The notes under the pieces: generated by a model
Databases searched by the model: none
The model's input: the letters and a program-made list of their open reading frames with translations, nothing else
Told to the model about the DNA's origin: nothing
Translations under genes and position numbers: made by a program
Assembly (NCBI GenBank): GCA_964234715.1
Contig: OZ174284.1
Length of the DNA: 64,000 nucleotides
Reading direction: 5' to 3' (one strand)
Source: Podarcis melisellensis
Taxonomy: Eukaryota
Part shown: piece after piece, positions 2,414-37,208 of the stretch
Layout: each line of letters opens with the position of its first letter
Numbering within the stretch: the first letter of the stretch is position 1

Positions 2414-2458
<45 letters not shown>

Positions 2459-2528
2459 TTATGGGTTAGCAGAGTCTGTAACCTGAAGTGTCTGTAACCT
2501 GAAGCGTATGTAACCCAAGGTACCACTG
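1983..2528 (+). mobile_element. Tc1/pogo-type MITE (~240-bp family) interrupted by an L2 3' end
   Basis: TIR CAGTGGTACCTCGGGTTA / TAACCCAAGGTACCACTG with TA on both sides. Body matches six other copies in the window. Confidence 0.9.
2151..2454 (+). mobile_element. L2-clade LINE 3' end inserted in the MITE
   Basis: Encodes NTLSQETRALRDLTSFRRACKTELFHQAFG (L2 ORF2 C-terminal pattern), then a gttagccgccctgag tail and (ATT)n. Confidence 0.8.
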
Positions 2529-2865
2529 TACTAAAGAGTACTTTAACATTATAGAAAGCATAGCTGTCAACTTTTCCCTTTTTAAAAAGGGAAATTCCCT
2601 TATTCCGAATAGGATTCCTTGCAAGAAAAGGGAAAAGTTGACAGCTATGATAGAATGAAAGCCACTCTCTTCATTCAAAAGTGAATTTTATTTGAAGGAA
2701 TGAAATGCAAAACTGAAGATTTTTTGTAAAGTCTTCTCAGAAGCTAAATGCTCATGAGATACAGAACGAAAGTAACGTTCGACTGTTTTAAGGGTGCAGG
2801 TAATAGTCTTGGCAAAGCCTAAGGGCTTTTAAACTGAGACATGATTCAGAGTTATGAGCCTGTAG

Positions 2866-3136
2866 ACCACAGAGCCTAGGACTTTGAATCCCCACGACAG
2901 GGTGAGCTCCTGTTGCTTGGTCCCTGCTCCTGCCAACCTAGCAGTTCGAAAGCACATCAAAGTGCAAGTAGATAAATAGGTACTGCTCCAGTGGGAAGGT
3001 AAATGGCATTTCCGTGTGCTGCTCTGGTTCGCCAGGAGAGGCTTAGTCATGCTGGCCACATGACCCGGAAGCTGTACGCCGGCTCCCTCGGTCACCACTG
3101 GACCTAATGGTCAGGGGTCCCTTTACCTTTACCTTT
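2866..3136 (+). mobile_element. Sauria SINE, 5'-truncated with internal deletions
   Basis: Matches the 901-1254 copy; (ACCTTT)n tail. Confidence 0.88.
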
Positions 3137-8931: not shown

Positions 8932-10639
8932 ATCTTGATCATATCCCATAGCTTTGACTCTTTTCTAGTATGGCTGCATCCTATTCTGGATGCTTCCTAA
9001 CCTCACAGCTGTGCTAAACATGCCATGTAGGCAGATGACAGGATAATGTAGCTGGTCACCCTCACTTCACAGCTGTAGCTCCACAGCAAACTGCCTTTGG
9101 GGTCAGTATCTGACATGCCATGGTGGAAACAGACAGGAACACCCCCTGCATGATGCGTTGAAGAGCCACCATCAACCAAAAGCAGTCAGCGATGCCCCAA
9201 AGGAAAAGCAGTCAGTTCTGCCCCAAAGGAACCAATGGTACTACTTGGCACAATCGCCTTCCTGTAGAAAAAGTGTAGAGCAGGGTTTGTTTTGCCCTCG
9301 CCCAGCCTGGAGGCTGCAATACCTTGAGGGCAACCTTGAAGGAGCTGGATGCCAGTGGTGGGCCGGGTAGAGGTAAGTAAGTAAGTGCAGGTGCCACTCT
9401 TAACAGGTGCCACAGCAGGGTCCATTCGTGCTGTGCAGAAGCCACCTAATACACACACATCTCCATTTGGGCAAGTTGGAGGCATTATTGCCATTTAAGG
9501 GCACATTCCAGCCAGGAGAAAGGATGGGAAGCAGACCCGGTGAAGCATATGGGCCTGAGGACTGGACAGAGGCCAGGAGAACTGCACTGGTCCCTTGGAC
9601 CTGATGTTCCTCACCTCTGCTGTCTAAAAACTGTCTAAAAAGGGTTGCATGATTTAATCAGGTAGAGATATCAAACATAGGAGCGGATTCTGGTTGGATG
9701 ACACCATAGAGCTGCAAAGGTTGATGCTAAAATAACACCCCCAACATCCCATGCTATTTGGGGAGAGCATTTTGCTGCGTGCTTTCGGGGAAGCAGTGAA
9801 ATATTCCCAAGGGTTTCTCCTGAGAAACTGATGCTCACTTAATGAGGAATGAAACTTACGTTAGCCAATAGAGATTAAAATTGGATCCACAGCTGTACCC
9901 CAAACTCATAGATGGTAGGGCTGGAAAGATAATTTCACTGATAATTTTTTTTCTAATGGAGGACTGAAATTCTCTAACAGCTTAGGAGAACTTTTTGAAA
10001 AGTACTCAAAATTGTTTTCTGAGAAATGTTAGGTTACGTGAAGTGATGGCTGCTGTCTTCTTTGCAAACCAGTGGCAAATGCGGTAACTGGGGAACTGGT
10101 AGTTGGCCCAAAAAAAGTGGTGGTGTTGAGTCGGTAGATGAGAAGCACCAGCTTGAGATTTTGCCATCCAATCCTTAGAGTTTATTTATTTTTAGACTGC
10201 CCCACCCCAAACAACTTGGAATGGACAACAATAAATTAAGAAACAAAGAATACAATATCCAGTCGAATTTCGATTAAACGCATCTACAAAAGTCAACAGA
10301 TGTGATAGCCTCAGCGCTCTGAGTGGACGTTCTTCATTTCCATCTCCCCTTCCCCCACCGAAAAACAGCAGCTCATATCGAAAATGCCTGACATTGCTTC
10401 TGAAAGGTTATGCAGGTTTTGGCGAGTCTCCAGCATGACAGCACTTCCTTAGCTGTGGGGCAGCCCCTAGGAATGCCCCTCTGCAAGGCCCAGATGTCTT
10501 GAGTTATTAGTCAGAAGGTGACCTCAAGAGGGCACTCTTGGTCAACGTTATGGGCTGTGATGGTCATATGGAGGGAGACAGTCTCTTAGGTATGCTCTAC
10601 CCAAACCGGATAGATGTTTAGGCAGGACACTGATTTTTC

Positions 10640-11758
10640 TTTTCTTAAATAACGTTTCTGTACAGGAGCAGAAATCACTATGCTACATTAAAATAACTTC
10701 AGAAATATATATATACATATAAAATTTTTACATGACACCCAAAGGCACTGGTTTGCATTGGGGCTCAGCTCCTCATTCCCAGTTATATTGGAAACAAGCA
10801 ATTACATATATATATATATATCGGAGGGGGGAAGTATACAGAACACAGTAGCCCCCGCCCCAAATAATTAAACGCCCACTCCCTAAGGTTGAGAAGTACT
10901 GCCAACAAAGTTGCGGGGGGAAACCCCCGCTGAAATTCTGTAGCAAACAGAAAGGACTTTTTGAACTGTATGGAATAAAATAGCTAACATCGTTCAATAT
11001 AATAATAGTAATGATAAGAAAAGCTTGCATGAGATCTAATGAAAGACTGAGAACCTCGGAAGCTTCAGCGTGGTGGCTAGAATTATAAACCAGTCTGAAA
11101 TTAAGCACCTCCAAATCCCATCGGTTTCAATGGGAGAGTTTAGCATGCACTTAAATAGACCCAATTCAAGTCAATGGAACTGTGCACTTAACTTTGGCCA
11201 GTTTTACCCATCAGTTTTAATTCAATAGATCAAGCATTTGTGAAGCTCTTAAAACGGAGAAGAATGCATGGGATTGGCTCTCTCTCTTTCTCTCTCTCTC
11301 TCTTTTTTTTGCTTTTGTTTTGTTTTTACTAGAAAGATACAGCTCTTTCAAAATAGCTGGTAGATACAGAAAGCATAAATATACAATAAAGTTTAAACAC
11401 CGATTGTACTAAATGCAACAATACAAAGAAGCAAATGGTAACACAATAAAACTGTATTACATTTGTGCTTTGAATATTACAGTACATTATATACATTGGT
11501 CCAAAATAAGCATCTCATGCCAAATGACGCAAAAGGAAAAATAAAGTAAAATAAGATAACCAAAGCAGCAAGCAAAAGAGAAAAAGGAAAGGGGAAAAAA
11601 CTCCAGCAAGTATTTACATTATCTTTTAATAAACATTCAACTGTGAACTGGTGCAATTTCCACTACATATATTTGAAGTCCGCCTTTTATTCCACACGAC
11701 CATCCTGTCTCCCTATTTCTACGCTATTCAGTAGGTTCTGCCGTTGTTTTTCTTTTTA

Positions 11759-11791
<33 letters not shown>

Positions 11792-11865
11792 CACGTTGAA
11801 CAAAAGCAAAGAAAAGAAAGGGTAAGAACATAGTGCTTCAATATTCTCCGCGACGAGGCATCGGA
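10640..11865 (-). promoter_or_regulatory. LMO3: LMO3 3' UTR (distal end uncertain) with Pumilio elements, miRNA seed matches and poly(A) signal candidates
   Basis: Transposon-free AU-rich sequence after the stop. Minus-strand AATAAA at 11691-11686 and ATTAAA at 11630-11625. TGTAHATA at 11793-11786, 11618-11611, 11495-11488 and 10717-10710. Confidence 0.7.
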
Positions 11866-11971
11866 TCAGCGAACTTGGGGCGCGTAACCTTCTTTCATTA
11901 AACCCTCCTCATAGTCTGTCTGGCACAGTATCATGTTGTTCTTTAGGAAAAATTTGTCTCCCACGCAAAAT
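11866..11971 (-). CDS. LMO3: LIM domain only protein 3, last coding exon
   Basis: After acceptor tatttccag it reads (R)FCVGDKFFLKNNMILCQTDYEEGLMKEGYAPQVR*, with TGA at 11868-11866. Phase joins the upstream exon (AG+A = Arg). The C-terminus matches LMO3, not LMO1. Too short to appear in the ORF track. Confidence 0.97.
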
Positions 11972-14114
11972 CTGGAAATACAAGAGGGGGGAAATAAGAT
12001 GAGAAACATGGAGGATCCAAGTTGCATTTAAAACATAGGTGTCAGGAAAACAAGCAGTTTTTTGTTGCCATCGGATGAGCCTCGCCAATGTGGGGAACGA
12101 CCAGAAACACTCTTGCCGATGACCTCAGTGTTTGAACTTGAATATACCCAGGGACCTAAATTGTCCAGGGCTTTGTACATTAATACAAGGACCATGAACT
12201 AGGCTTGGTAGTAGATGAGCACCATTTCCACAATGGTGTCAGATGTTGTGGGCCATGTTCCCTCATCAATTTCTGCACCAGCTAGAGCTTCAGGAGCAGA
12301 GTCAATGGCAGCCCCACAGAGCGTGTTGCAGTAATCCAGCCCTGGGGTTATGAACCCATGGACCACAGCAGTTGTATAAAGACTAAGCCACTGTTGACCA
12401 CTTCTCTTGGTGGCACTCTAGAACGTTAGACATTACAGAAGCCTTTCCCAACCTGATGCCCACCAGATGTTTGGGACTACAATTCCCATCAGCCCCGGCT
12501 TAGGGAAGGCTGCACCACAGCGTCACAAAAATCTTCACTTGGTGGCTTCATCACACTATTTAATTCCATCCGCATCGCTGTCAATCGACATTTCAGGCCC
12601 GGGAGGGGTCGTGTGAATTGGCCTTTATATACAGCCAAGCTAATTTCGCACTAAGTGTGGCATGGGCAATACTTTTTCAATGGGTTCATTTTTCCTTAAT
12701 AACAAAAAGAGAGCTCTCTTTTAACGCCCGCCTGGAGAAACAGGGGGAGCACCACACCCCAAGGGGTCTTTTGGCGCAGAGAAGAGCTTTCGCTAATGAA
12801 TGATCGTGCATCGGGGGGTCACATTCTGTTTGTGGCCAACGCTCCATCTATAAAAACATATTGGGAGGTGCGACACCCAAAAGCTCCAATTAAACCAAAT
12901 CGAGTAACCTAAATGAACTTCTTAGCATTGAGGCAGACAGATGAAAACCAGTCTCCCTCAGCTAATTACCCGCTTTACTCTCGAAACTATTGTTTAATTC
13001 GGTAATGGATTACAATGTTCTTTTTTGCCGTATAATTTTCCAAGCGAGCGACATCTTGGACACAATTAGAAGCAGAAATAAATGTGCCCGTTGTTTACGG
13101 TAGATTTAACAACAGAGTAGCTATGGGAATAGGCTGTATATGTACTTAATTGTAACAATTTAACCTTCAAATAGCGGTGTCTGGTGTAGTTGACCCAGTA
13201 AAAGTACGTATAATTACACAAGTTGACCTTGGCGACCTTCGATTGTGGGGCCCCCTCCCTCCCCACCCTTTTTATCAGTCAGTCAGTTTCTAATGATGTC
13301 TGAAGCAGAAATCTGAGGGAATTGTCACAGAGTAAATTGTGTATTGAAAGGAGGCCTTTAATGTTTTGTGAAGTTGTGAGGTTTTAAATGGGGCAGCAGT
13401 TGGGCTGATTTACATTTGTAAAGATTGGAATGCTAGACAAACAGCGAACCCATTTATTTTCCAACCGGGTAGCTTTGGAAATTTATCCTTATGCTCGCTA
13501 AATAGAGTGAGGGAAAATAGTGTAATAAAAAAGTGGATTGAAAAGAATTAGCTTGGCTCCTGAAGGAAAATTGGGCTGTTTATGTGTGGACTCCCCTCTC
13601 CTCCCCACCTCACGCTCTCCCCCATCTCTCGGATTAATACCCGCTCATAGCTCTTGACTGAAAATACAGATTATGGAACCGGTCCTGAAAACGCTTTTCA
13701 AGTTATTTATGCTCAAAGCAGCTTCATAGAGAAAACACACACTCCTAATTTTGGATCCCCCCACTCTTCCCCGACATATTTTTATATTTCGTTATATTCC
13801 ACCTACATCTTATTGAGTGGAGCAGATGGAAATAAAAAAAGGGCTCCTGCAGAGGGTAAGCAGTTATTTTCTGAGCTCTTTAGCACCTGACCATTTTTGT
13901 TTCTCTGCAAAAATAAAAAAAGCCCCATGTTAAACAGCTTTTCTGGCCAAATTGCACAATACTTGCAGAGTTCTTCCTCCCACAAAGCATACCTCAGTTA
14001 TATAAAAAGAAGCTCGTATGAATATATAACTGGGTGTGTGTTGGTGGGGGGAAGAGTCTGCCCCCCAATCACATCTCCCCTGTTGATTGTGGCCAGAGTG
14101 GTCCATACTCAGTT

Positions 14115-14730
14115 AGGTAAAGGGGTAAAGGTAAAGGTAAGACTCCCTGGAAAAGACCCTGATGTTGGGAAAGATGGAGGGCACAAGGAGAAGGGGACGA
14201 CAGAGGAAGAGGTGGTTGGACAGTGTTCTCGAAGCTACCAGCATGAGTTTGACCAAACTGCGGGAGGCAGTGGAAGATAGGTGTACCTGGCATGCTCTGG
14301 TCCATGGGGTCATGAAGAGTCAGACATGACTAAATGACTAAACAACAACAACAAAGGTAAAGGACCCCTGGGTGGCTAAGTCCAGTCAAAGGCGACTATG
14401 GGGTTGCTGCGTTCATCTCGCTTTCAGGCTGAGGGAGGCAGCGTTTGTCCACAGACAGTGTTCCAGGTCATGTGGCCAGCATGGCTAAACCGCTTCGGGC
14501 ACAACGGGACACCATGACGGAAACCAGAGCGCACGGAAATGCCGTTTACTTTCCTGCCACAGCGGTACCTATTTATCTACTTGCACTGGCGTGCTTTGGA
14601 ACTGCTAGGTTGGCAGGAGCTAAGACAGAGCAACAGGAGCTCACTCCATCGTGGGGATTCGAACCACCGATCTTCTGATCAGCAAGCCCAAGAGGCTCAG
14701 TGGTTTAGACCACAGTGCCACCCGCATGCC
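14115..14730 (-). mobile_element. Sauria SINE with a BovB fragment inserted in its tail
   Basis: (AAAGGT)n tail split at 14140/14353; body is the reverse complement of the Sauria consensus. Confidence 0.88.
14141..14352 (+). mobile_element. BovB (RTE-clade) LINE 3' end
   Basis: Encodes DSLEKTLMLGKMEGTRRRGRQRKRWLDSVLEATSMSLTKLREAVEDRCTWHALVHGVMKSQT, the BovB ORF C-terminal pattern. (CAA)n tail; flanked by aaaggtaa on both sides. Confidence 0.9.
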
Positions 14731-17493: not shown

Positions 17494-18715
17494 TAGCTAA
17501 TGTGGCACTCTTTAGATGCTGTTGGACGACAACTCCCATCATCAGCTGACCATTGGCCATGCTGGCTGGCGCTGATGGGAGTTATGGTCCAAGGACATCT
17601 AGAGGGCTAGCCCTCTTTTTACCCATCATTCAGTTCGGTCTCCACAGGAGCAGCCCATGTGGTGAGGCAGAGCCACAGAATGGCCCTCCTGGCACTTGGG
17701 TTGCTGCAGCTTGCCCGGATGCCATTGGGGTGGGGCTGGGCAGCTGTGAGGTTGGGGCTCCATCAGCGCACCAAGCACTGGAACCAATCTGGCGGCCCTA
17801 CCAGGGCAAGTGCACAGCCCAAAGGTATACACACAGCAGAGAGCTAACTTTCTTGTAAAAGACAACCCTTACAGTCGCTTCTACAGCTTTGGATACCTCT
17901 GCACACCAATCTGGAATCTAGGCAGCTATTTCCAGGTCTGTGCTGTATGGAGCTGTTGCAGCAGCTGGAGACCACCCCCTTTCCACCAGTTTATGTACCT
18001 TCCCCTGACAGGGTGAGCACAGGTAGCTGGAGACTACGCCTGCGTGGAAACTGCCTCTGCTCTTCCTGCTTCAGTTCCCTTCTGGTTCTGGGAGAGAGTG
18101 GTGCAGGGAGAGGGTAGGGAAGCCCCCAGCACTTTCTTTGCCTGGCCTGTCTCTTCCTCCGCTTTGAAGCTTCCCTTGCCTCTGATTCTTGCTTCCTGGT
18201 TGGTACAGGAACCCAGTTGGTACAGGAACCCAGTCCTGCCAGTCCCTGACACTGCCCCACTCCAGTGCAGGTTTAGTTGCAGTGACATTCCATTCCAGTG
18301 GCTTCCATGTTAAGCCAGTTAAGGTTGAGGAAGTAGGAGAGCCACCTCAACAAACATTTTTATGTATTTTATAACATATTTAACGTGCGCCTTCTTCCAA
18401 AAAATGGGCTGTACCCATTGTTATGCAAGCAAAGTTCCACTCACCCAAGAGGACTCCCCTTTCTTCTGCTCTACAAACACCTCCCTGAAATCTGACTTGC
18501 AGGGTGCACATAGTGGCCGGAAGGGCAAGGAGAAGAGGAAGTTCTTTTGTGCTCATGGAAGTTTGCTGTGCAAGTGGATGTTGGGATGCATCTTGGGAGA
18601 TGGGGTAATTGGCAGCCCCCCAGCTGGCTCCAGCCCACCGGCTGGCAGCTGGGGCGAACTCCACGTCTTGGAACAGCATCAAAAACTGTGACTCAAGCCT
18701 CAGAAACCTTTAGAG

Positions 18716-19852
18716 CAGTGTTTCCCAACTGGTGTTCCGCGGCACACTAGTGTGCCGCGAGACGTTGCCTGGTGTGCCGTGGGAGGGAGGCGGGCGAGTC
18801 GGGCAGCTAGAGGCCTTAGGCGCCCTGCAGAAAGGCGTCCTCTTTGTGGGTGGGTTCTCCCCCCTCCCTTAGCGCATCGTATTTAGTTGGGGATTCTGGA
18901 GAGGGGGGCGGGGGCGCGCTGGCCCCGAGCGGAACAGACGCGCCGTCGTCCCCACCTCCCTCTCCTCAGTAGCTCCGAGCCGACTGACTGAGGGTGGGAC
19001 GCGGCCAGCGGCGTCCTCTGTCTCTCTCTCTCCGCCTCCCAGCACCGCTTTTCCCGAGGCGGGTGCGCGCCTAAGGCTGAATGGGAGCAGCCTGGAGGCT
19101 TGGCGGCCTCTCAGCGGCTCATGACGGGCGTCCCCGAGGCGGGAGGTGCTGAGCAGGGGCTCTGCGAGAGGGCGCGAGGGATGCGTGGTGGTGCCTGCGC
19201 GCGCGTGACTTAAGAGGGCGACCTGCTGCCTCTCCTCTCTCTCCCCTCCCTCCCCTCATGGGCACGGAGTCCCCGGCACAGCTTGGCGCTACTACAGCTA
19301 CAGCTGCTGCTGCTGCTCCTGCTTGGATGAAGGCGGCTGCTTCTTCCTAATGCCCAGCCTCTGAGGGACCGCAGTCTCCCGCCCTTTTTTTTTTTTTTTG
19401 GCGGGATGCTGAGGTAAAGGATCCCCTCGCGCGCGGGCGGGCATCTCTTTGGGCAGGGCGCGTGTGGAGGCTTAAGGTGGGGAGTGTGGAGGGGTTGCCG
19501 CTTGCGAGGGGAGGGTTCATATTGTATTGGGCTGCGGTGTGGGCGACACGGCTCTCCAATGGCCAGCCCGCGGAGGAACATTGAGTTGGAGCATTTCGAG
19601 GAGAGGGACAAAAGGCGCACTGAATAAAGTATTTTATAATTTTTCATATTTCTGTTTACTTACTATTTCATAATAAAGTAATTATAAAATACTTTATTTG
19701 TGTTTATTTGATTCCTATTAAAGAGAGTTACTTTATATATAGTCAATATAGGCACAGAGTTAATTTTTTAAACATTTTCTAATGGTGGTGTGCCTCGAGA
19801 TTTTTTTCATGAAACAAGTGTGCCTTTGCCCAAAAAAGGTTGGGAAACACTG
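18716..19852. mobile_element. Non-autonomous hAT transposon (1137 bp) carrying CpG-rich cargo, Pack-type candidate
   Basis: TIRs CAGTGTTTCCCAAC / GTTGGGAAACACTG; perfect 8-bp TSD ctttagag at 18708-18715 and 19853-19860; subterminal GTGTGCC repeats; no transposase ORF. Confidence 0.92.
19559..19627 (+). pseudogene. DCLK2: Captured 5' coding fragment of doublecortin-like kinase 2, forming a 22-codon ORF
   Basis: MASPRRNIELEHFEERDKRRTE*. IELEHFEERDKR is identical to my recollection of the human DCLK2 N-terminus (MASTRSIELEHFEERDKRPR). DCLK1 (MELEHFDERDKA) and DCX fit less well. The last codons and the stop lie at the junction with the AT-rich transposon arm. Confidence 0.8.
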
Positions 19853-20900
19853 CTTTAGAGACTGAGCACGCAAGCCAGCAAAGATAAGAACTCTTTGCAA
19901 CGGAAGTAGCGGACAGAGGCATATGTAAGCATATTTACAAGCGTTTATTCAGCATTTGAACAAAGGAAAAACATGTCTGCTTCCCTTCGTGTCCAAGCAA
20001 AAAGCATAGGCAAAAGCTATATGCAATGGAAGTTCTGCTGGAAGTAAACAGACATGTGACATACAAAAACTTCACATACCTGTTCTAAAGGTGGAACGGA
20101 AACTCATTATCCTAACAGTGGATACAGCCCAACGTGCATTTCAACACTTATGAAGTGTTGAAAACTGAATCATAATATTCTGCGAATGTTTTAAAGTTTT
20201 AAAGTCAGAGTTTTAAAGTTTCGCAGCCCTGCAGCATTTTAACCTGAGACTCCAAAAGAATCTGTCCGTGTACAATTTTATAATGGGTTGGGTCTAGACT
20301 TAGTCAAGCTCAGAGAAGAATCAAGTGATTTCAGTGGGTCTAAAAGTAGCAATGACTTGAGCCCAGTTGGTTTCTGCAGGTCTAAGTCTGGATTCAAGCC
20401 AACATGCTCAAAGTCAAAATGAAGCGGATCTCCAAAAGGATAGGACCTCCATAATTTCATAGCCACAGAAGGTTTTGCTCTATGTGATACTGGGGCTCAG
20501 TGATGGTGGCAGCATTACGATGGAGCTGCCACTCAAATTCGGAGCTGCATTCAGATGCAATTTGCACCAATGGATTTTAGCATTACAATCAAGAATGGCC
20601 TCAGGCTTGCAAGCCATGGTTTACTATGTTTGCCGCTAAACCATGAACAACGTATACAGTACAATCACCGTAGATGTGGGGCAAAGGGGAAAACTAAGTT
20701 CATGCCTGTAATACTGAACCACAGATAATTATTGTGCAAGAGTAGGGTTGCTGTGATAAGAGGTAGGTAAGAGCAGGTACACTGTGTCCAGTTTTGACCA
20801 GAGAATGATTGCAAGATATTGTACCTCCATACCCTCCTAATTCTAGGTCAGTCCCAAGTTGGTCTCAGTACATGGAAGGAGACTTAAGAAACTCTCCTAC

Positions 20901-21026
20901 CTCTGATTACAAAGTTGACAGGCGAAGCAGTCCAGGTGGTAAACATTGTCCTTGGCCCTCATCACCATCTCAAAAGCAGGGATGAGTTTGCTGCAGGCTG
21001 CACAGTTCCCCGTAACGCCAAATAAC
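20901..21026 (-). CDS. LMO3: LIM domain only protein 3, penultimate coding exon (126 nt, N-terminal part of LIM2)
   Basis: Translates (R)LFGVTGNCAACSKLIPAFEMVMRAKDNVYHLDCFACQLCNQ(R). Pyrimidine tract plus AG acceptor (ttttctgtag) at 21027-21028 and GT donor (AG|gtagga) at 20899-20900; phase 2 at both ends. Confidence 0.97.
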
Positions 21027-21552: not shown

Positions 21553-21686
21553 NNNNNNNNNNNNNNNNNNNNNNNNNNNNNNNNNNNNNNNNNNNNNNNN
21601 NNNNNNNNNNNNNNNNNNNNNNNNNNNNNNNNNNNNNNNNNNNNNNNNNNNNNNNNNNNNNNNNNNNNNNNNNNNNNNNNNNNNNN
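21553..21686. other. Assembly gap (134 N)
   Basis: N run. Confidence 1.
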
Positions 21687-25605: not shown

Positions 25606-25909
25606 NNNNNNNNNNNNNNNNNNNNNNNNNNNNNNNNNNNNNNNNNNNNNNNNNNNNNNNNNNNNNNNNNNNNNNNNNNNNNNNNNNNNNNNNNNNNNNN
25701 NNNNNNNNNNNNNNNNNNNNNNNNNNNNNNNNNNNNNNNNNNNNNNNNNNNNNNNNNNNNNNNNNNNNNNNNNNNNNNNNNNNNNNNNNNNNNNNNNNNN
25801 NNNNNNNNNNNNNNNNNNNNNNNNNNNNNNNNNNNNNNNNNNNNNNNNNNNNNNNNNNNNNNNNNNNNNNNNNNNNNNNNNNNNNNNNNNNNNNNNNNNN
25901 NNNNNNNNN
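25606..25909. other. Assembly gap (304 N)
   Basis: N run. Confidence 1.
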
Positions 25910-28981: not shown

Positions 28982-29590
28982 NNNNNNNNNNNNNNNNNNN
29001 NNNNNNNNNNNNNNNNNNNNNNNNNNNNNNNNNNNNNNNNNNNNNNNNNNNNNNNNNNNNNNNNNNNNNNNNNNNNNNNNNNNNNNNNNNNNNNNNNNNN
29101 NNNNNNNNNNNNNTCTCCTGCCATCAGTCAACATGATAAATGTGGCAAGTTCAGTAATGCATGGCCAGCCCCGAGCTGCCTNNNNNNNNNNNNNNNNNNN
29201 NNNNNNNNNNNNNNNNNNNNNNNNNNNNNNNNNNNNNNNNNNNNNNNNNNNNNNNNNNNNNNNNNNNNNNNNNNNNNNNNNNNNNNNNNNNNNNNNNNNN
29301 NNNNNNNNNNNNNNNNNNNNNTGTGGTTTTCCTCGGGCCGGTTACGCTCTGCCATCAGTGCACTTTCTTGTATAATGTGCATTTTAAAAAAAAAGGAAAA
29401 AAGAGGGGGTGGAAGGAAAGAAATGCCTTTCCCAATACTATACCTTTCCCNNNNNNNNNNNNNNNNNNNNNNNNNNNNNNNNNNNNNNNNNNNNNNNNNN
29501 NNNNNNNNNNNNNNNNNNNNNNNNNNNNNNNNNNNNNNNNNNNNNNNNNNNNNNNNNNNNNNNNNNNNNNNNNNNNNNNNNNNNNNNNNN
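28982..29590. other. Three assembly gaps (28982-29113, 29182-29321, 29451-29590)
   Basis: N runs. Confidence 1.
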
Positions 29591-36235: not shown

Positions 36236-37208
36236 AGCTCCCCACATCCCTAGGTCAAACCTTTTTCTTTTTCAAAGTTTCACTTTGGTCGCAACTACAA
36301 ACCGGGCCACTGCTGAATTTCTCCCCTTGGTATAGCAGCCAGGAAGGCTGCTAGGCTGCGAAAGAAATTATGCCATGCTTTATTAAATGGTAAACAGCTG
36401 TTTCAGTCACAATACGGCACATGCTAATTGAAGAATGCCGTAAGCACTTCTCCACTAATAAAGGGCTTTTAGGAGACAAGGGGACTGAGGGGGAGAAAAT
36501 ATGTACCACGTACAAAATTACTTTCATAGGTGCCCTTCCTTTGAAATTCAGGCATGCGGGTCATTCCAGGTGAGAAGCACACTCTGAGAGGCAACGCGTG
36601 GGAATGAATATTCAATAATCATTAGTGGCTTTGCTCGAGGCTCACGGCGTCATGGGTAAAAAAGGCAGGAGGAAGAATGAAGGCAGAACTCAGCTCCTTG
36701 TCAGGCTTCCGAGACTCAGGGCTGCTGGGAGAGACGTCAAGGCGGAACCTGTGAAGCGTCAGGTGACACACTTCCGACTTGCTCCTAGGAAACACGCCAA
36801 AGATTTTGCCCAAGGAAACTGAATTAAGGATGCGACACTAAGCAGAGCCGCTGGAGCTGGCAAAGGTCATGGGCACAGTGCTTCCTGGGGGCTGGGAAAT
36901 TCCCTTACACACAAAAATTGTGAGAAGCCACGAGGGGGAGAATTCTATCTGTTTATCTCCCTCACATTTTGCATCCCACCTCTTCCTCCAAGGATCTCAT
37001 AACACCCTTGGTCTATCCCAACAAAGCTGCAAGGTAGAAGCTGTGCCAGTGTATCTTTAGGAGGGCCAAATAAGCCAGTGGTTCCCAAACTTTCTTGGGA
37101 TACGCTTGATTTCAAAAACTCATCCTACCCAACCCAAACAAAAGGCAATGTCCAGAATAGTGGTTTGCATGGCCCACTAAGAAAGATATAGCACAATAAA
37201 ATTCAATA

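What the first reader, a model, noticed from the sequence alone, without database searches (positions are those of the whole stretch)
18716..19852. Pack-type hAT transposon carrying the start of DCLK2 inside an LMO3 intron
Seen: a 1137-bp element with 14-bp TIRs, a perfect 8-bp TSD and no transposase. Its interior (~18781-19620) is CpG-island-like in an otherwise CpG-poor region and ends in ATG-GCC-AGC-CCG-CGG-AGG-AAC-ATT-GAG-TTG-GAG-CAT-TTC-GAG-GAG-AGG-GAC-AAA-AGG-CGC (MASPRRNIELEHFEERDKRR). Recalled knowledge: this matches the N-terminus of DCLK2, which is not a neighbour of LMO3 in human; host-fragment capture by TIR transposons is well known in plants (Pack-MULEs) and much less described in vertebrates. 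Inference: a hAT family transduplicated part of the DCLK2 first exon and moved it here. Intact TIRs, TSD and CpGs suggest a recent insertion.
Basis: partly seen in the sequence, partly recalled or inferred. Interest (0 to 1): 0.9.

Follow-up and report, generated by a model that had tools for sequence, protein, structure and literature searches.

The report
Multicopy gene-fragment-carrying hAT transposon
A small cut-and-paste (hAT) transposon with no transposase of its own sits in the last intron of a lizard LMO3-like gene and carries about 800 bases of CpG-island DNA ending in what looks like the start of DCLK2. It is one of tens of copies of such a carrier, a known kind of element that has rarely been reported amplified this far in vertebrates.

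Summary
Perfect 14-bp inverted ends lie at 18716-18729 and 19839-19852, with a perfect 8-bp duplication (CTTTAGAG) on each side. There is no transposase. The interior is CpG-rich (observed/expected 0.74, against 0.31-0.34 in the flanks).

Public contigs of three related species show three things:
- The two arms are high-copy, hundreds to thousands of copies.
- A form without the cargo exists.
- The cargo is better bounded as 18815-19614 (800 bp), not 18781-19620.

The cargo is itself multicopy: about 50-65 times single-copy depth in two species and about 16 times in a third. So this is one copy of an amplified Pack-hAT family, not a capture made at this site. This scan had already found another copy of the family on other DNA of this genome (s1-498151, in a VSX2 intron).

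The element sits inside an older repeat. Other copies of that repeat run through the site with a single CTTTAGAG.

The host gene is confirmed as an LMO gene on the minus strand, and the element lies in its last intron, antisense. Calling it LMO3 rests on my memory of that protein.

The DCLK2 origin also rests only on my recall of the N-terminus; no tool search confirmed it and the parent locus was not retrieved. No raw reads were available to bridge the two junctions of this locus.

The parts
18708..18715 (.). Left target-site duplication CTTTAGAG
   Evidence: Exact direct repeat of 19853-19860 (D9). It fits both hAT target consensuses, nTnnnnAn and nnnTAnnn.
18716..18729 (+). Left terminal inverted repeat CAGTGTTTCCCAAC
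   Evidence: Exact reverse complement of 19839-19852.
18716..18814 (+). 5' arm of the hAT backbone, with subterminal GTGTGCC/GGCACAC motifs at 18741, 18750 and 18772
   Evidence: Summed contig depth is 1e5-2.5e5 in X1 against 46.9 for single-copy flank. Other forms share the arm up to 18784, 18798, 18804 or 18814 and then diverge (tables 2, 5, 7).
18815..19614 (+). Cargo: 800 bp of CpG-island-like DNA foreign to the backbone (GC 0.65, 62 CpG, o/e 0.74), with several upstream ATGs and 18.7 codons of a DCLK2-like start at its 3' end
   Evidence: Depth falls 40- to 100-fold at both limits. Cargo contigs are at 2447-3057 (X1), 191-199 (X4) and 540-608 (X12), against single-copy 46.9, 12.2 and 9.71. 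The cargo-less joint 18784->19623 exists. Contigs span arm-cargo junctions in other species: X4 18771-19032, X4 19542-19633, X12 19432-19643.
19559..19627 (+). Short ORF MASPRRNIELEHFEERDKRRTE*. Residues 1-19 are cargo; the last three and the stop come from the 3' arm.
   Evidence: Read from the sequence. The likeness to the DCLK2 N-terminus is recalled, not tool-tested (searches were blank).
19615..19852 (+). AT-rich 3' arm of the hAT backbone, with GTGTGCC motifs at 19788 and 19818
   Evidence: Summed depth is 1.2e5-2.9e5 in X1. Other forms join the arm at 19615, 19623, 19730, 19751, 19780 and 19782 (table 7). GC is 0.27.
19623..19628 (+). AATAAA signal in the arm, overlapping the ORF's stop codon
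   Evidence: Its use as a poly(A) signal was not tested.
19839..19852 (-). Right terminal inverted repeat
19853..19860 (.). Right target-site duplication CTTTAGAG
   Evidence: D9.
18556..18715 (.). Left half of an older interspersed repeat that received the insertion
   Evidence: Depth rises to about 7800 in X1. The unique-flank contigs of X1 and X4 both stop at 18636 (tables 2, 8).
19861..20130 (.). Right half of the same host repeat
   Evidence: Depth is 10,000-14,500 in X1. At least three X1 contigs and two X4 contigs at single-copy depth skip the element with mismatched flanks. In the two whose letters I checked against the window there is a single CTTTAGAG or TTAGAG; the others diverge just after the site. 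These are paralogous uninterrupted sites (tables 5, 5c).
20901..21026 (-). LMO-type coding exon (start of the second LIM domain), with acceptor ag 21028-21027 and donor gt 20900-20899
   Evidence: Pfam LIM E 5e-10. Best solved relatives are LMO2 and LMO4, E 2e-15.
11866..11971 (-). Last coding exon of the same LMO gene, ending ...DYEEGLMKEGYAPQVR and stop
   Evidence: It completes the split Arg codon of the exon above. 'LMO3' is by my recall of its C-terminus.

Best explanation
This is one copy of an amplified, non-autonomous hAT transposon family whose middle was replaced by about 800 bp of host CpG-island DNA (a Pack-TIR or 'Pack-hAT').

Shown:
- The ends (14-bp TIRs, subterminal GTGTGCC motifs) belong to a backbone present in hundreds to thousands of copies.
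- A cargo-less form joins 18784 to 19623 through 27 nt.
- Another form shares 18716-18814 and 19615-19852, which bounds the cargo at 18815-19614.
- The arm-cargo chimera is present at roughly 16-65 times single-copy depth in three species.
- The element sits in an older repeat whose other copies are uninterrupted at a single CTTTAGAG.
- The site is the last intron of an LMO gene, with the cargo antisense to it.

Inferred:
- The cargo was acquired once, in a common ancestor of these species. The likely route is template switching during repair or replication of a hAT copy: abortive gap repair, or the FoSTeST model of Tan et al. 2021.
- The chimera was then mobilised in trans by a hAT transposase encoded elsewhere, which recognises the ends. 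One such cut-and-paste event placed this copy here and made the 8-bp duplication.
- The cargo is most likely the promoter or 5'UTR and the first 19 codons of DCLK2. This rests on recalled sequence.
- Here the copy most likely does nothing for the host. Its only two differences from the family majority seen inside the cargo are CpG-to-TpG changes, which fits a methylated, decaying orphan CpG island. It could still act as an antisense promoter feeding into the arm's AATAAA.
For: -: exact TIRs and TSD.
- CpG o/e 0.74 against 0.31-0.34, and no second copy in the window.
-, depth per contig: flank 46.9/12.2/9.71 against cargo 2447-3057/191-199/540-608.
-, joints: 18784->19623 with 27 nt between, and 18779->19830 (a mini derivative).
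-, loose ends: at 18798, 18804 and 18814 (behind) and at 19615, 19623, 19730, 19751, 19780 and 19782 (before). The same arms are joined to several other, mostly GC-rich, interiors.
-, contigs across both arm-cargo junctions in X4 and X12.
-, skipping contigs with mismatched flanks; where checked against the window they carry one TSD copy.
-, differences from the family majority: at 19064 and 19351 the majority in all three species has C where this copy has T, both in CpG context.
- LMO exons on the minus strand either side of the element.
- the TSD fits the hAT target consensus.
- Pack-TIRs, mostly hAT, are documented in animals.
- an earlier, independent note of another copy of this cargo family in a VSX2 intron of the same genome.
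Against: - No parent DCLK2 locus was retrieved, and the peptide match is from memory only.
- Searches with the peptide were blank: phmmer against 1.84 billion representatives, PDB, Pfam, atlas and paper text.
- All runs were contigs, so no read bridges the flank-TIR junctions of this particular locus. Contig depth is only a rough guide to copy number.
- The one arm-less contig carrying the cargo (X15) stops matching at 19486, and that run has nothing over the ATG part. The cargo could therefore be a mosaic.
- No transposase source was identified.
- No RNA or methylation data are available.
Confidence: 0.75

Rival explanations
1. The cargo is captured host DNA but not simply DCLK2. It could be a mosaic of two sources, 18815-19486 from one locus and 19487-19614 from the DCLK2 start. 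Or it could come from another gene or a divergent transcript sharing that CpG island.
For:: the only arm-less contig with cargo (X15 record 19, 956 nt) matches 18815-19486 and then runs on unlike. X15 has zero depth over 19501-19605. Mosaic cargo was noted for other elements of this genome (s1-494028).
Against: In the three DNA runs the cargo is continuous across 19486 at family depth (X12 contig 19432-19643). A contig end or low expression of the ATG-bearing part would explain X15 equally well. The recalled 12-residue identity to DCLK2 sits directly at an ATG.
Confidence: 0.15
2. The GC-rich core is native to a hAT subfamily, for instance the remains of an autonomous element's own 5' region. 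The DCLK2-like peptide would then be coincidence, and there was no host capture.
For: The core is multicopy. No parent locus was found. The peptide search found no DCLK protein.
Against: Depth drops 40- to 100-fold between arms and core, so most backbone copies lack the core. A cargo-less form and several forms with other interiors share the same arms. An arm-less contig carries the core in a fourth organism. A 19-residue N-terminal likeness beginning exactly at an ATG is unlikely by chance, if my recall is right.
Confidence: 0.07
3. Assembly artefact: the element was mis-joined into this intron.
For: No read or contig bridging the flank-TIR junctions of this locus was seen, because the insertion lies in a repeat where short-read contigs break.
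Against: There is an exact 8-bp duplication at both sides of exact TIRs. Other copies of the host repeat are uninterrupted with a single CTTTAGAG. A mis-join would not create a TSD.
Confidence: 0.03
4. The copy is functional here. Its orphan CpG island would drive an antisense transcript inside the LMO3 intron that ends at the arm's AATAAA, affecting LMO3 or producing a small RNA or peptide.
For: CpG o/e is still 0.74. An ATG, a short ORF and AATAAA follow in order. A first-stage note on the same stretch proposes this. Tan et al. report that a share of Pack-TIRs are transcribed.
Against: No RNA evidence: the one possible RNA run has no contig over 19501-19605. The two cargo differences from the family majority are both CpG decay, as expected for methylated DNA. 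The 22-codon ORF is a truncated accident of the junction.
Confidence: 0.1

Closest known systems
Animal Pack-TIRs, in particular multicopy Pack-hAT-N8_XT of Xenopus tropicalis (Tan et al. 2021, PMC8277862)
   Same: A non-autonomous hAT element with TIRs and an 8-bp TSD whose interior is a few hundred bases of a host gene's 5' region (there 291 bp of the CAPSL 5'UTR). It is spread to several loci with distinct TSDs. No transposase is present.
   Different: That survey of 100 genomes found only 4 multicopy cases of 370, and the illustrated one has 3 copies. Here contig depth suggests about 16-65 copies in three species. The cargo is a full CpG-island-sized piece reaching into the coding start.
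Pack-MULEs of rice and other plants
   Same: TIR transposons that pick up GC-rich gene fragments and amplify them. The resulting chimeras are mostly non-functional. (Established knowledge; papers listed.)
   Different: A different superfamily: Mutator, with 9-10 bp TSDs and long TIRs. They occur in plants and in thousands per genome.
Ds-type internal-deletion and filler derivatives of Ac (maize hAT)
   Same: Short hAT ends kept, interior deleted and replaced by unrelated DNA, and mobilisation in trans by the autonomous element. (Established knowledge; see the abstract of PMC3260210.)
   Different: No autonomous partner was identified here. The filler is a recognisable host promoter or first-exon region.
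Helitron capture of the NUBPL promoter and first exon in vesper bats (recalled: Pritham and Feschotte 2007; Thomas et al. 2014)
   Same: A vertebrate DNA transposon that amplified a host promoter plus 5'UTR plus first exon to many copies and scattered orphan promoters.
   Different: That is a rolling-circle Helitron, with no TIRs or TSD.

Membership tests
hAT superfamily, non-autonomous element | 8-bp target-site duplication | tested here: met
   CTTTAGAG is exact on both sides.
hAT superfamily, non-autonomous element | Target consensus nTnnnnAn (Ac family) or nnnTAnnn (Buster family) | tested here: met
   CTTTAGAG has T at position 2 and A at position 7, and also TA at positions 4-5. It fits both, so it cannot assign the subfamily (for the consensus).
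hAT superfamily, non-autonomous element | Short terminal inverted repeats beginning CAG/TAG, plus subterminal repeats | tested here: met
   14-bp exact TIR CAGTG.... GTGTGCC or its complement occurs 3 times in the 5' arm and twice in the 3' arm.
hAT superfamily, non-autonomous element | A related autonomous element encoding a hAT transposase (BED, DDE/RNase H-like and hATC domains) | not testable with these tools
   None is in the window. No eukaryotic genome or repeat library could be searched.
Pack-TIR (Tan et al. 2021) | Interior foreign to the transposon consensus, between intact TIRs and TSD | tested here: met
   Cargo-less joint 18784->19623, a depth drop of 40- to 100-fold, and other interiors on the same arms.
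Pack-TIR (Tan et al. 2021) | An identifiable parental copy of the interior elsewhere in the genome | tested here: inconclusive
   One arm-less contig in a fourth organism carries 18815-19486. No parent locus was fetched. The DCLK2 likeness is recalled only (searches were blank).
Pack-TIR (Tan et al. 2021) | For the multicopy class: several copies with the same chimeric structure and different TSDs | tested here: inconclusive
Copy number is inferred from contig depth, about 16-65 times. I did not see other copies' TSDs myself.
CpG island (Gardiner-Garden and Frommer criteria, recalled) | At least 200 bp, GC at least 0.5, CpG observed/expected at least 0.6 | tested here: met
   800 bp, GC 0.65, o/e 0.74.
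DCLK2 first exon | Sequence match to DCLK2 of the same or a related species | tested here: inconclusive
   As I recall the mammalian N-terminus, it shares 12 consecutive residues (IELEHFEERDKR) and the MAS start. phmmer of a 30-residue query found only a spurious repeat protein. A 19-residue match cannot reach significance in 1.8 billion proteins.
LMO3 gene (host) | LIM-only exon structure and LMO3-specific residues | tested here: met
   LIM domain, Pfam E 5e-10. Best solved relatives LMO2 and LMO4. A terminal exon with a stop follows in phase. Exons were searched apart and not joined. LMO3 rather than LMO1 is from memory.

The most novel reading that the evidence does not exclude
This hAT lineage of lacertid lizards would be a vertebrate counterpart of rice Pack-MULEs. 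On this reading it repeatedly replaces its interior with CpG-island promoters or first exons of different host genes, and amplifies each chimera to tens of copies. The result would be dozens of orphan, possibly active promoters scattered into introns of developmental genes such as LMO3 and VSX2. The same arms joined to several different GC-rich interiors point this way. So do the 27 earlier notes of such elements with different cargo in this genome.
Probability: 0.45. Interest if true: 0.75.

Novelty: new member of a known kind. Interest (0 to 1): 0.5.

Why it matters
Gene-fragment capture by cut-and-paste transposons is a major source of new gene structures in plants. In animals it was documented mostly as single-copy, transposition-independent events: 4 multicopy cases among 370 in 100 genomes.

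A hAT chimera carrying a CpG-island promoter region, amplified to tens of copies and shared by several lizard species, shows that capture followed by real transposition can be productive in an amniote. It also gives a natural experiment on what happens to dozens of identical orphan CpG islands placed in different chromatin contexts: methylation, decay, and antisense transcription in host genes.

For this particular locus the practical consequence is modest. It is a young insertion, probably neutral, antisense in the last intron of LMO3.

Tried and rejected
- Peptide against solved structures. The first try was in the wrong frame (meaningless). The right frame gave no match.
- phmmer of a 30-residue stretch (8 in-frame 5'UTR codons plus the 22-codon ORF) against 1.84 billion representatives. 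The single hit was a repeat protein with hemopexin-like repeats, a summed-repeat artefact. This is no evidence against DCLK2, because the informative part is only 19 residues.
- ESM Atlas feature search with the same 30 residues: only unnamed short clusters at 0.82-0.84, which is noise level.
- Full-text search for the peptide words: none.
- Search of the 5.8-billion protein collection with the 145-residue antisense ORF that spans the arm-cargo junction. I hoped to fetch other copies or the parent locus; there were no hits.
- Second copies of the element or of the host repeat inside the window: none.
- The other TIR-like 14-mers in the window (7994, 37076, 61202) each have two mismatches. No partner arm was found near 37076.
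- Rfam and tRNA scans of 17500-20500: nothing at gathering level and no tRNA-like head for the host repeat.
- The bacterial promoter/terminator scan is irrelevant to a vertebrate and is disregarded.
- Orthologous empty site in other species: not decidable. Short-read contigs break at 18636 where the host repeat starts, and contigs right of 20130 are missing in every run, possibly through the tool's filter.
- LMO exons were searched one by one by reference. The joined protein was not built or searched.
- The N blocks were left alone.

Full report
**Observation**

- CAGTGTTTCCCAAC lies at 18716-18729, and its exact reverse complement at 19839-19852.
- These are bracketed by exact CTTTAGAG at 18708-18715 and 19853-19860.
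- An exact 14+8-base arrangement of this kind within 3 kb is expected about 1e-5 times in a 64-kb window.
- The 1137-bp element has no transposase-sized ORF.
- The ATG is at 19559. The ORF reads MASPRRNIELEHFEERDKRRTE and stops at 19625-19627.

**Anatomy from public contigs**

I laid the Logan contigs of four runs on 17716-20852. They were three whole-genome-sized runs of organisms A, B and G, and one small run of organism H guessed to be RNA. No raw reads were on offer, so starts, ends and exact depth cannot be read. Per-contig depth and break points are still informative.

- Single-copy flank: the contig over 17716-18636 has depth 46.9 in X1 with no mismatch in 921 bases. It has depth 12.2 in X4 and 9.71 in X12.
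- The two ends of the element are at summed depths of 1e5-3e5 in X1 and X4 and about 4e3 in X12. The backbone is therefore a high-copy family.
- Between about 18815 and 19614 the depth falls 40- to 100-fold but stays far above single copy. Contigs there have depth 2447-3057 in X1, 191-199 in X4 and 540-608 in X12. Relative to the flank this is roughly 52-65, 16 and 56-63 times.
- Contig depth is only a rough guide to copy number. Collapsed copies share words, GC bias applies, and the tool warns against reading the summed bins as copy number. The order of magnitude, tens of copies, is nonetheless clear.

**Limits of the cargo**

- A joint 18784->19623 with 27 other letters between (AAAATTGAAAAATTCGAAAGATTTAAA) is the backbone without cargo.
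- Further forms share the 5' arm up to 18798, 18804 or 18814 and then continue with other, mostly GC-rich letters.
- On the other side, forms join the 3' arm at 19615, 19623, 19730, 19751, 19780 or 19782.
- The form that shares most with this element shares 18716-18814 and 19615-19852. I therefore place the foreign segment at 18815-19614 (800 bp, GC 0.65, 62 CpG, o/e 0.74).
- It follows that only the first 19 residues of the ORF belong to the cargo. The last codons, the stop and the AATAAA at 19623 come from the AT-rich arm.
- Contigs of other species cross both arm-cargo junctions at family depth: X4 18771-19032, X4 19542-19633, and X12 19432-19643 with no mismatch. The chimeric structure is therefore real and not peculiar to this assembly.

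**Insertion site**

- Both immediate flanks (about 18556-18715 and 19861-20130) are themselves a repeat, at depth 7,800-14,500 in X1.
- Several contigs at about single-copy depth skip the whole element with mismatched flanks.
- One example is X1 18702->19881 with AGAAATCTTTAGAGATTGAGCGCGCAAGCCAG between. That is the window's flank with three mismatches in 31 and one CTTTAGAG.
- I read these as other copies of the host repeat, uninterrupted at the target. This is what a transposition that created the duplication predicts (tables 5 and 5c).
- CTTTAGAG fits both hAT target preferences, nTnnnnAn and nnnTAnnn, so it supports hAT but not a subfamily.
- Because the insertion lies in a repeat, the short-read contigs break at 18636. 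I could decide neither whether this very insertion is shared by the other species, nor whether reads bridge its flank junctions.
- Contigs right of 20130 are missing in all runs, which the tool says proves nothing.

**Host gene**

- On the minus strand there is an exon at 21026-20901 with good splice sites. It encodes [41 protein letters not shown].
- It matches Pfam LIM at E 5e-10. Its best solved relatives are LMO2 and LMO4, E 2e-15.
- A terminal coding exon at 11971-11866 encodes FCVGDKFFLKNNMILCQTDYEEGLMKEGYAPQVR and a stop. It completes the split codon of the first exon.
- The element therefore lies about 1 kb into the 8.9-kb last intron of an LMO gene, with the cargo's sense strand antisense to the gene.
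- That the gene is LMO3 rather than LMO1 rests on my memory of their C-termini.
- The exons were searched apart.

**Is the cargo DCLK2?**

- From memory, human and mouse DCLK2 begin MASTRSIELEHFEERDKRPRPG. The cargo's MASPRRNIELEHFEERDKR would then share the MAS start and twelve consecutive residues. It is clearly closer to DCLK2 than to DCLK1.
- I could not turn this into a tool result. PDB, Pfam, the ESM Atlas and a text search were blank.
- phmmer of a 30-residue stretch against 1.84 billion representatives gave only a spurious repeat protein. A 19-residue match cannot reach significance in a library of that size, so the blank is uninformative.
- A search with the 145-residue antisense ORF, meant to fetch other copies or the parent locus, found nothing.
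- The nearest thing to a parent is a 956-nt contig of organism H. It matches 18815-19486 at about 98%, begins exactly at my left breakpoint, is not joined to the hAT arm, and has about 290 further letters that fit nothing here.
- That run has no contig over 19501-19605. This leaves open a mosaic cargo, or a divergent transcript of a bidirectional CpG-island promoter. I record it as unexplained.

**Age**

- Where X1 contigs cover the cargo (393 bp listed), this copy differs from the family majority at 19064 and 19351. There is also one extra CTG unit near 19303.
- At both positions the majority in all three species has C in a CpG where this copy has T (tables 3, 4).
- Two CpG-to-TpG changes fit a young insertion, about 0.5% from its family. 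It has been methylated and has begun to decay, rather than being a brand-new one. Tables 3 and 4 list only the best-supported differences, so this is a lower bound.
- The identical majority sequence in A, B and G means the capture and at least part of the amplification predate their separation, or that they exchange genes.

**Mechanism**

- Shown: hAT-type ends and TSD, foreign cargo, a multicopy chimera, and insertion into a pre-existing repeat.
- Inferred, acquisition: a hAT copy lost its interior and acquired the CpG-island fragment by template switching during double-strand-break repair or replication. This is how Ds-like derivatives arise, and it is the FoSTeST proposal for multicopy Pack-TIRs.
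- Inferred, spread: a transposase encoded elsewhere then moved the chimera by cut-and-paste, with copy gain through repair from the sister chromatid or transposition during replication.
- The arms truncated at 99 and 238 bp, without internal TIRs, argue against a composite of two elements flanking the promoter.
- The same arms joined at different break points to several GC-rich interiors suggest that such replacements happened repeatedly in this family. One interior holds a TGACGTCA motif typical of CpG-island promoters (table 7).

**Comparison with what is known**

- Tan et al. 2021 (PMC8277862) found 370 Pack-TIRs in 100 animal genomes, 208 of them hAT.
- Only four were multicopy: three in Xenopus tropicalis and one in alligator. 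The illustrated case has three copies of a 291-bp 5'UTR fragment.
- The present family is the same kind of thing but amplified roughly ten-fold further, and its cargo is a whole CpG-island-sized 5' region.
- I found no paper describing this in lacertids.
- This scan had already met the family. Note s1-498151 reports another copy in a VSX2 intron of the same genome and 'dozens' of copies in several species. My depth estimates agree with that, and they rest on my own read-laying run.
- 27 notes report hAT elements with other 5'-end cargo in this genome.

**Verdict**

The feature is real, and its anatomy is refined. The Pack-hAT reading and the LMO intron context are supported. The DCLK2 source is likely but unproven. 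The capture did not happen here. It is a new member of a known kind, unusual for its copy number. This single copy is probably neutral.

Noticed in passing
window 18716-18779 joined to 19830-19852 (seen in other loci): A roughly 96-bp mini derivative of the same hAT exists: 5' end to 18779, then CGAGCGAGT, then the last 23 bases. It is at about 48 times single-copy depth in X1 and about 18 times in X4, and it is also present in the small run X15.
   Followed up: no
joint 19853 -> 18711 in run X1 (table 5c): A contig at depth 17 joins the tail of a hAT copy to the head of another with 8 letters (CACTAGAG) between. This is either two elements in tandem sharing one target-length spacer somewhere else in the genome, or an excision by-product.
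   Followed up: no
window 18815-19486 (run X15, record 19): A 956-nt contig of a fourth organism carries this part of the cargo without the hAT arm and then runs on for about 290 letters unlike the window. The same run has nothing over 19501-19605. It may be the parent locus or its transcript, or a sign that the cargo is a mosaic.
   Followed up: partly
window 17515-17599: A palindromic stretch scores on both strands against the mir-5408 precursor model (38 and 32 bits, gathering score 90). It is most likely a small MITE-like hairpin rather than a miRNA gene.
   Followed up: no
window 17821-18240: A low-copy repeat just upstream of the host repeat has summed depth up to about 1070 in X1 against 46.9 for unique flank. 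Many contigs show internal 70-165-base skips, which suggests a variable tandem or satellite-like unit.
   Followed up: no
window 20131-20852: Almost no contigs of any of the four runs lie here, although X1 matches the left flank perfectly. The tool's filter for human-like records may explain it, since conserved non-coding elements are expected in LMO3 introns. No conclusion is drawn.
   Followed up: no
window 21553-21686, 25606-25909, 28982-29113, 29182-29321, 29451-29590: Five blocks of N lie upstream (in gene orientation) of the LIM exon.
   Followed up: no
table 2 (arms 18661-18765 and 19711-19815): Relative to single-copy depth, the backbone arms are about 5,000-14,000 times in organisms A and B but only about 450 times in organism G. 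The cargo is about 60 times in both A and G and about 16 times in B. If real, backbone and cargo family expanded independently in different lineages.
   Followed up: no
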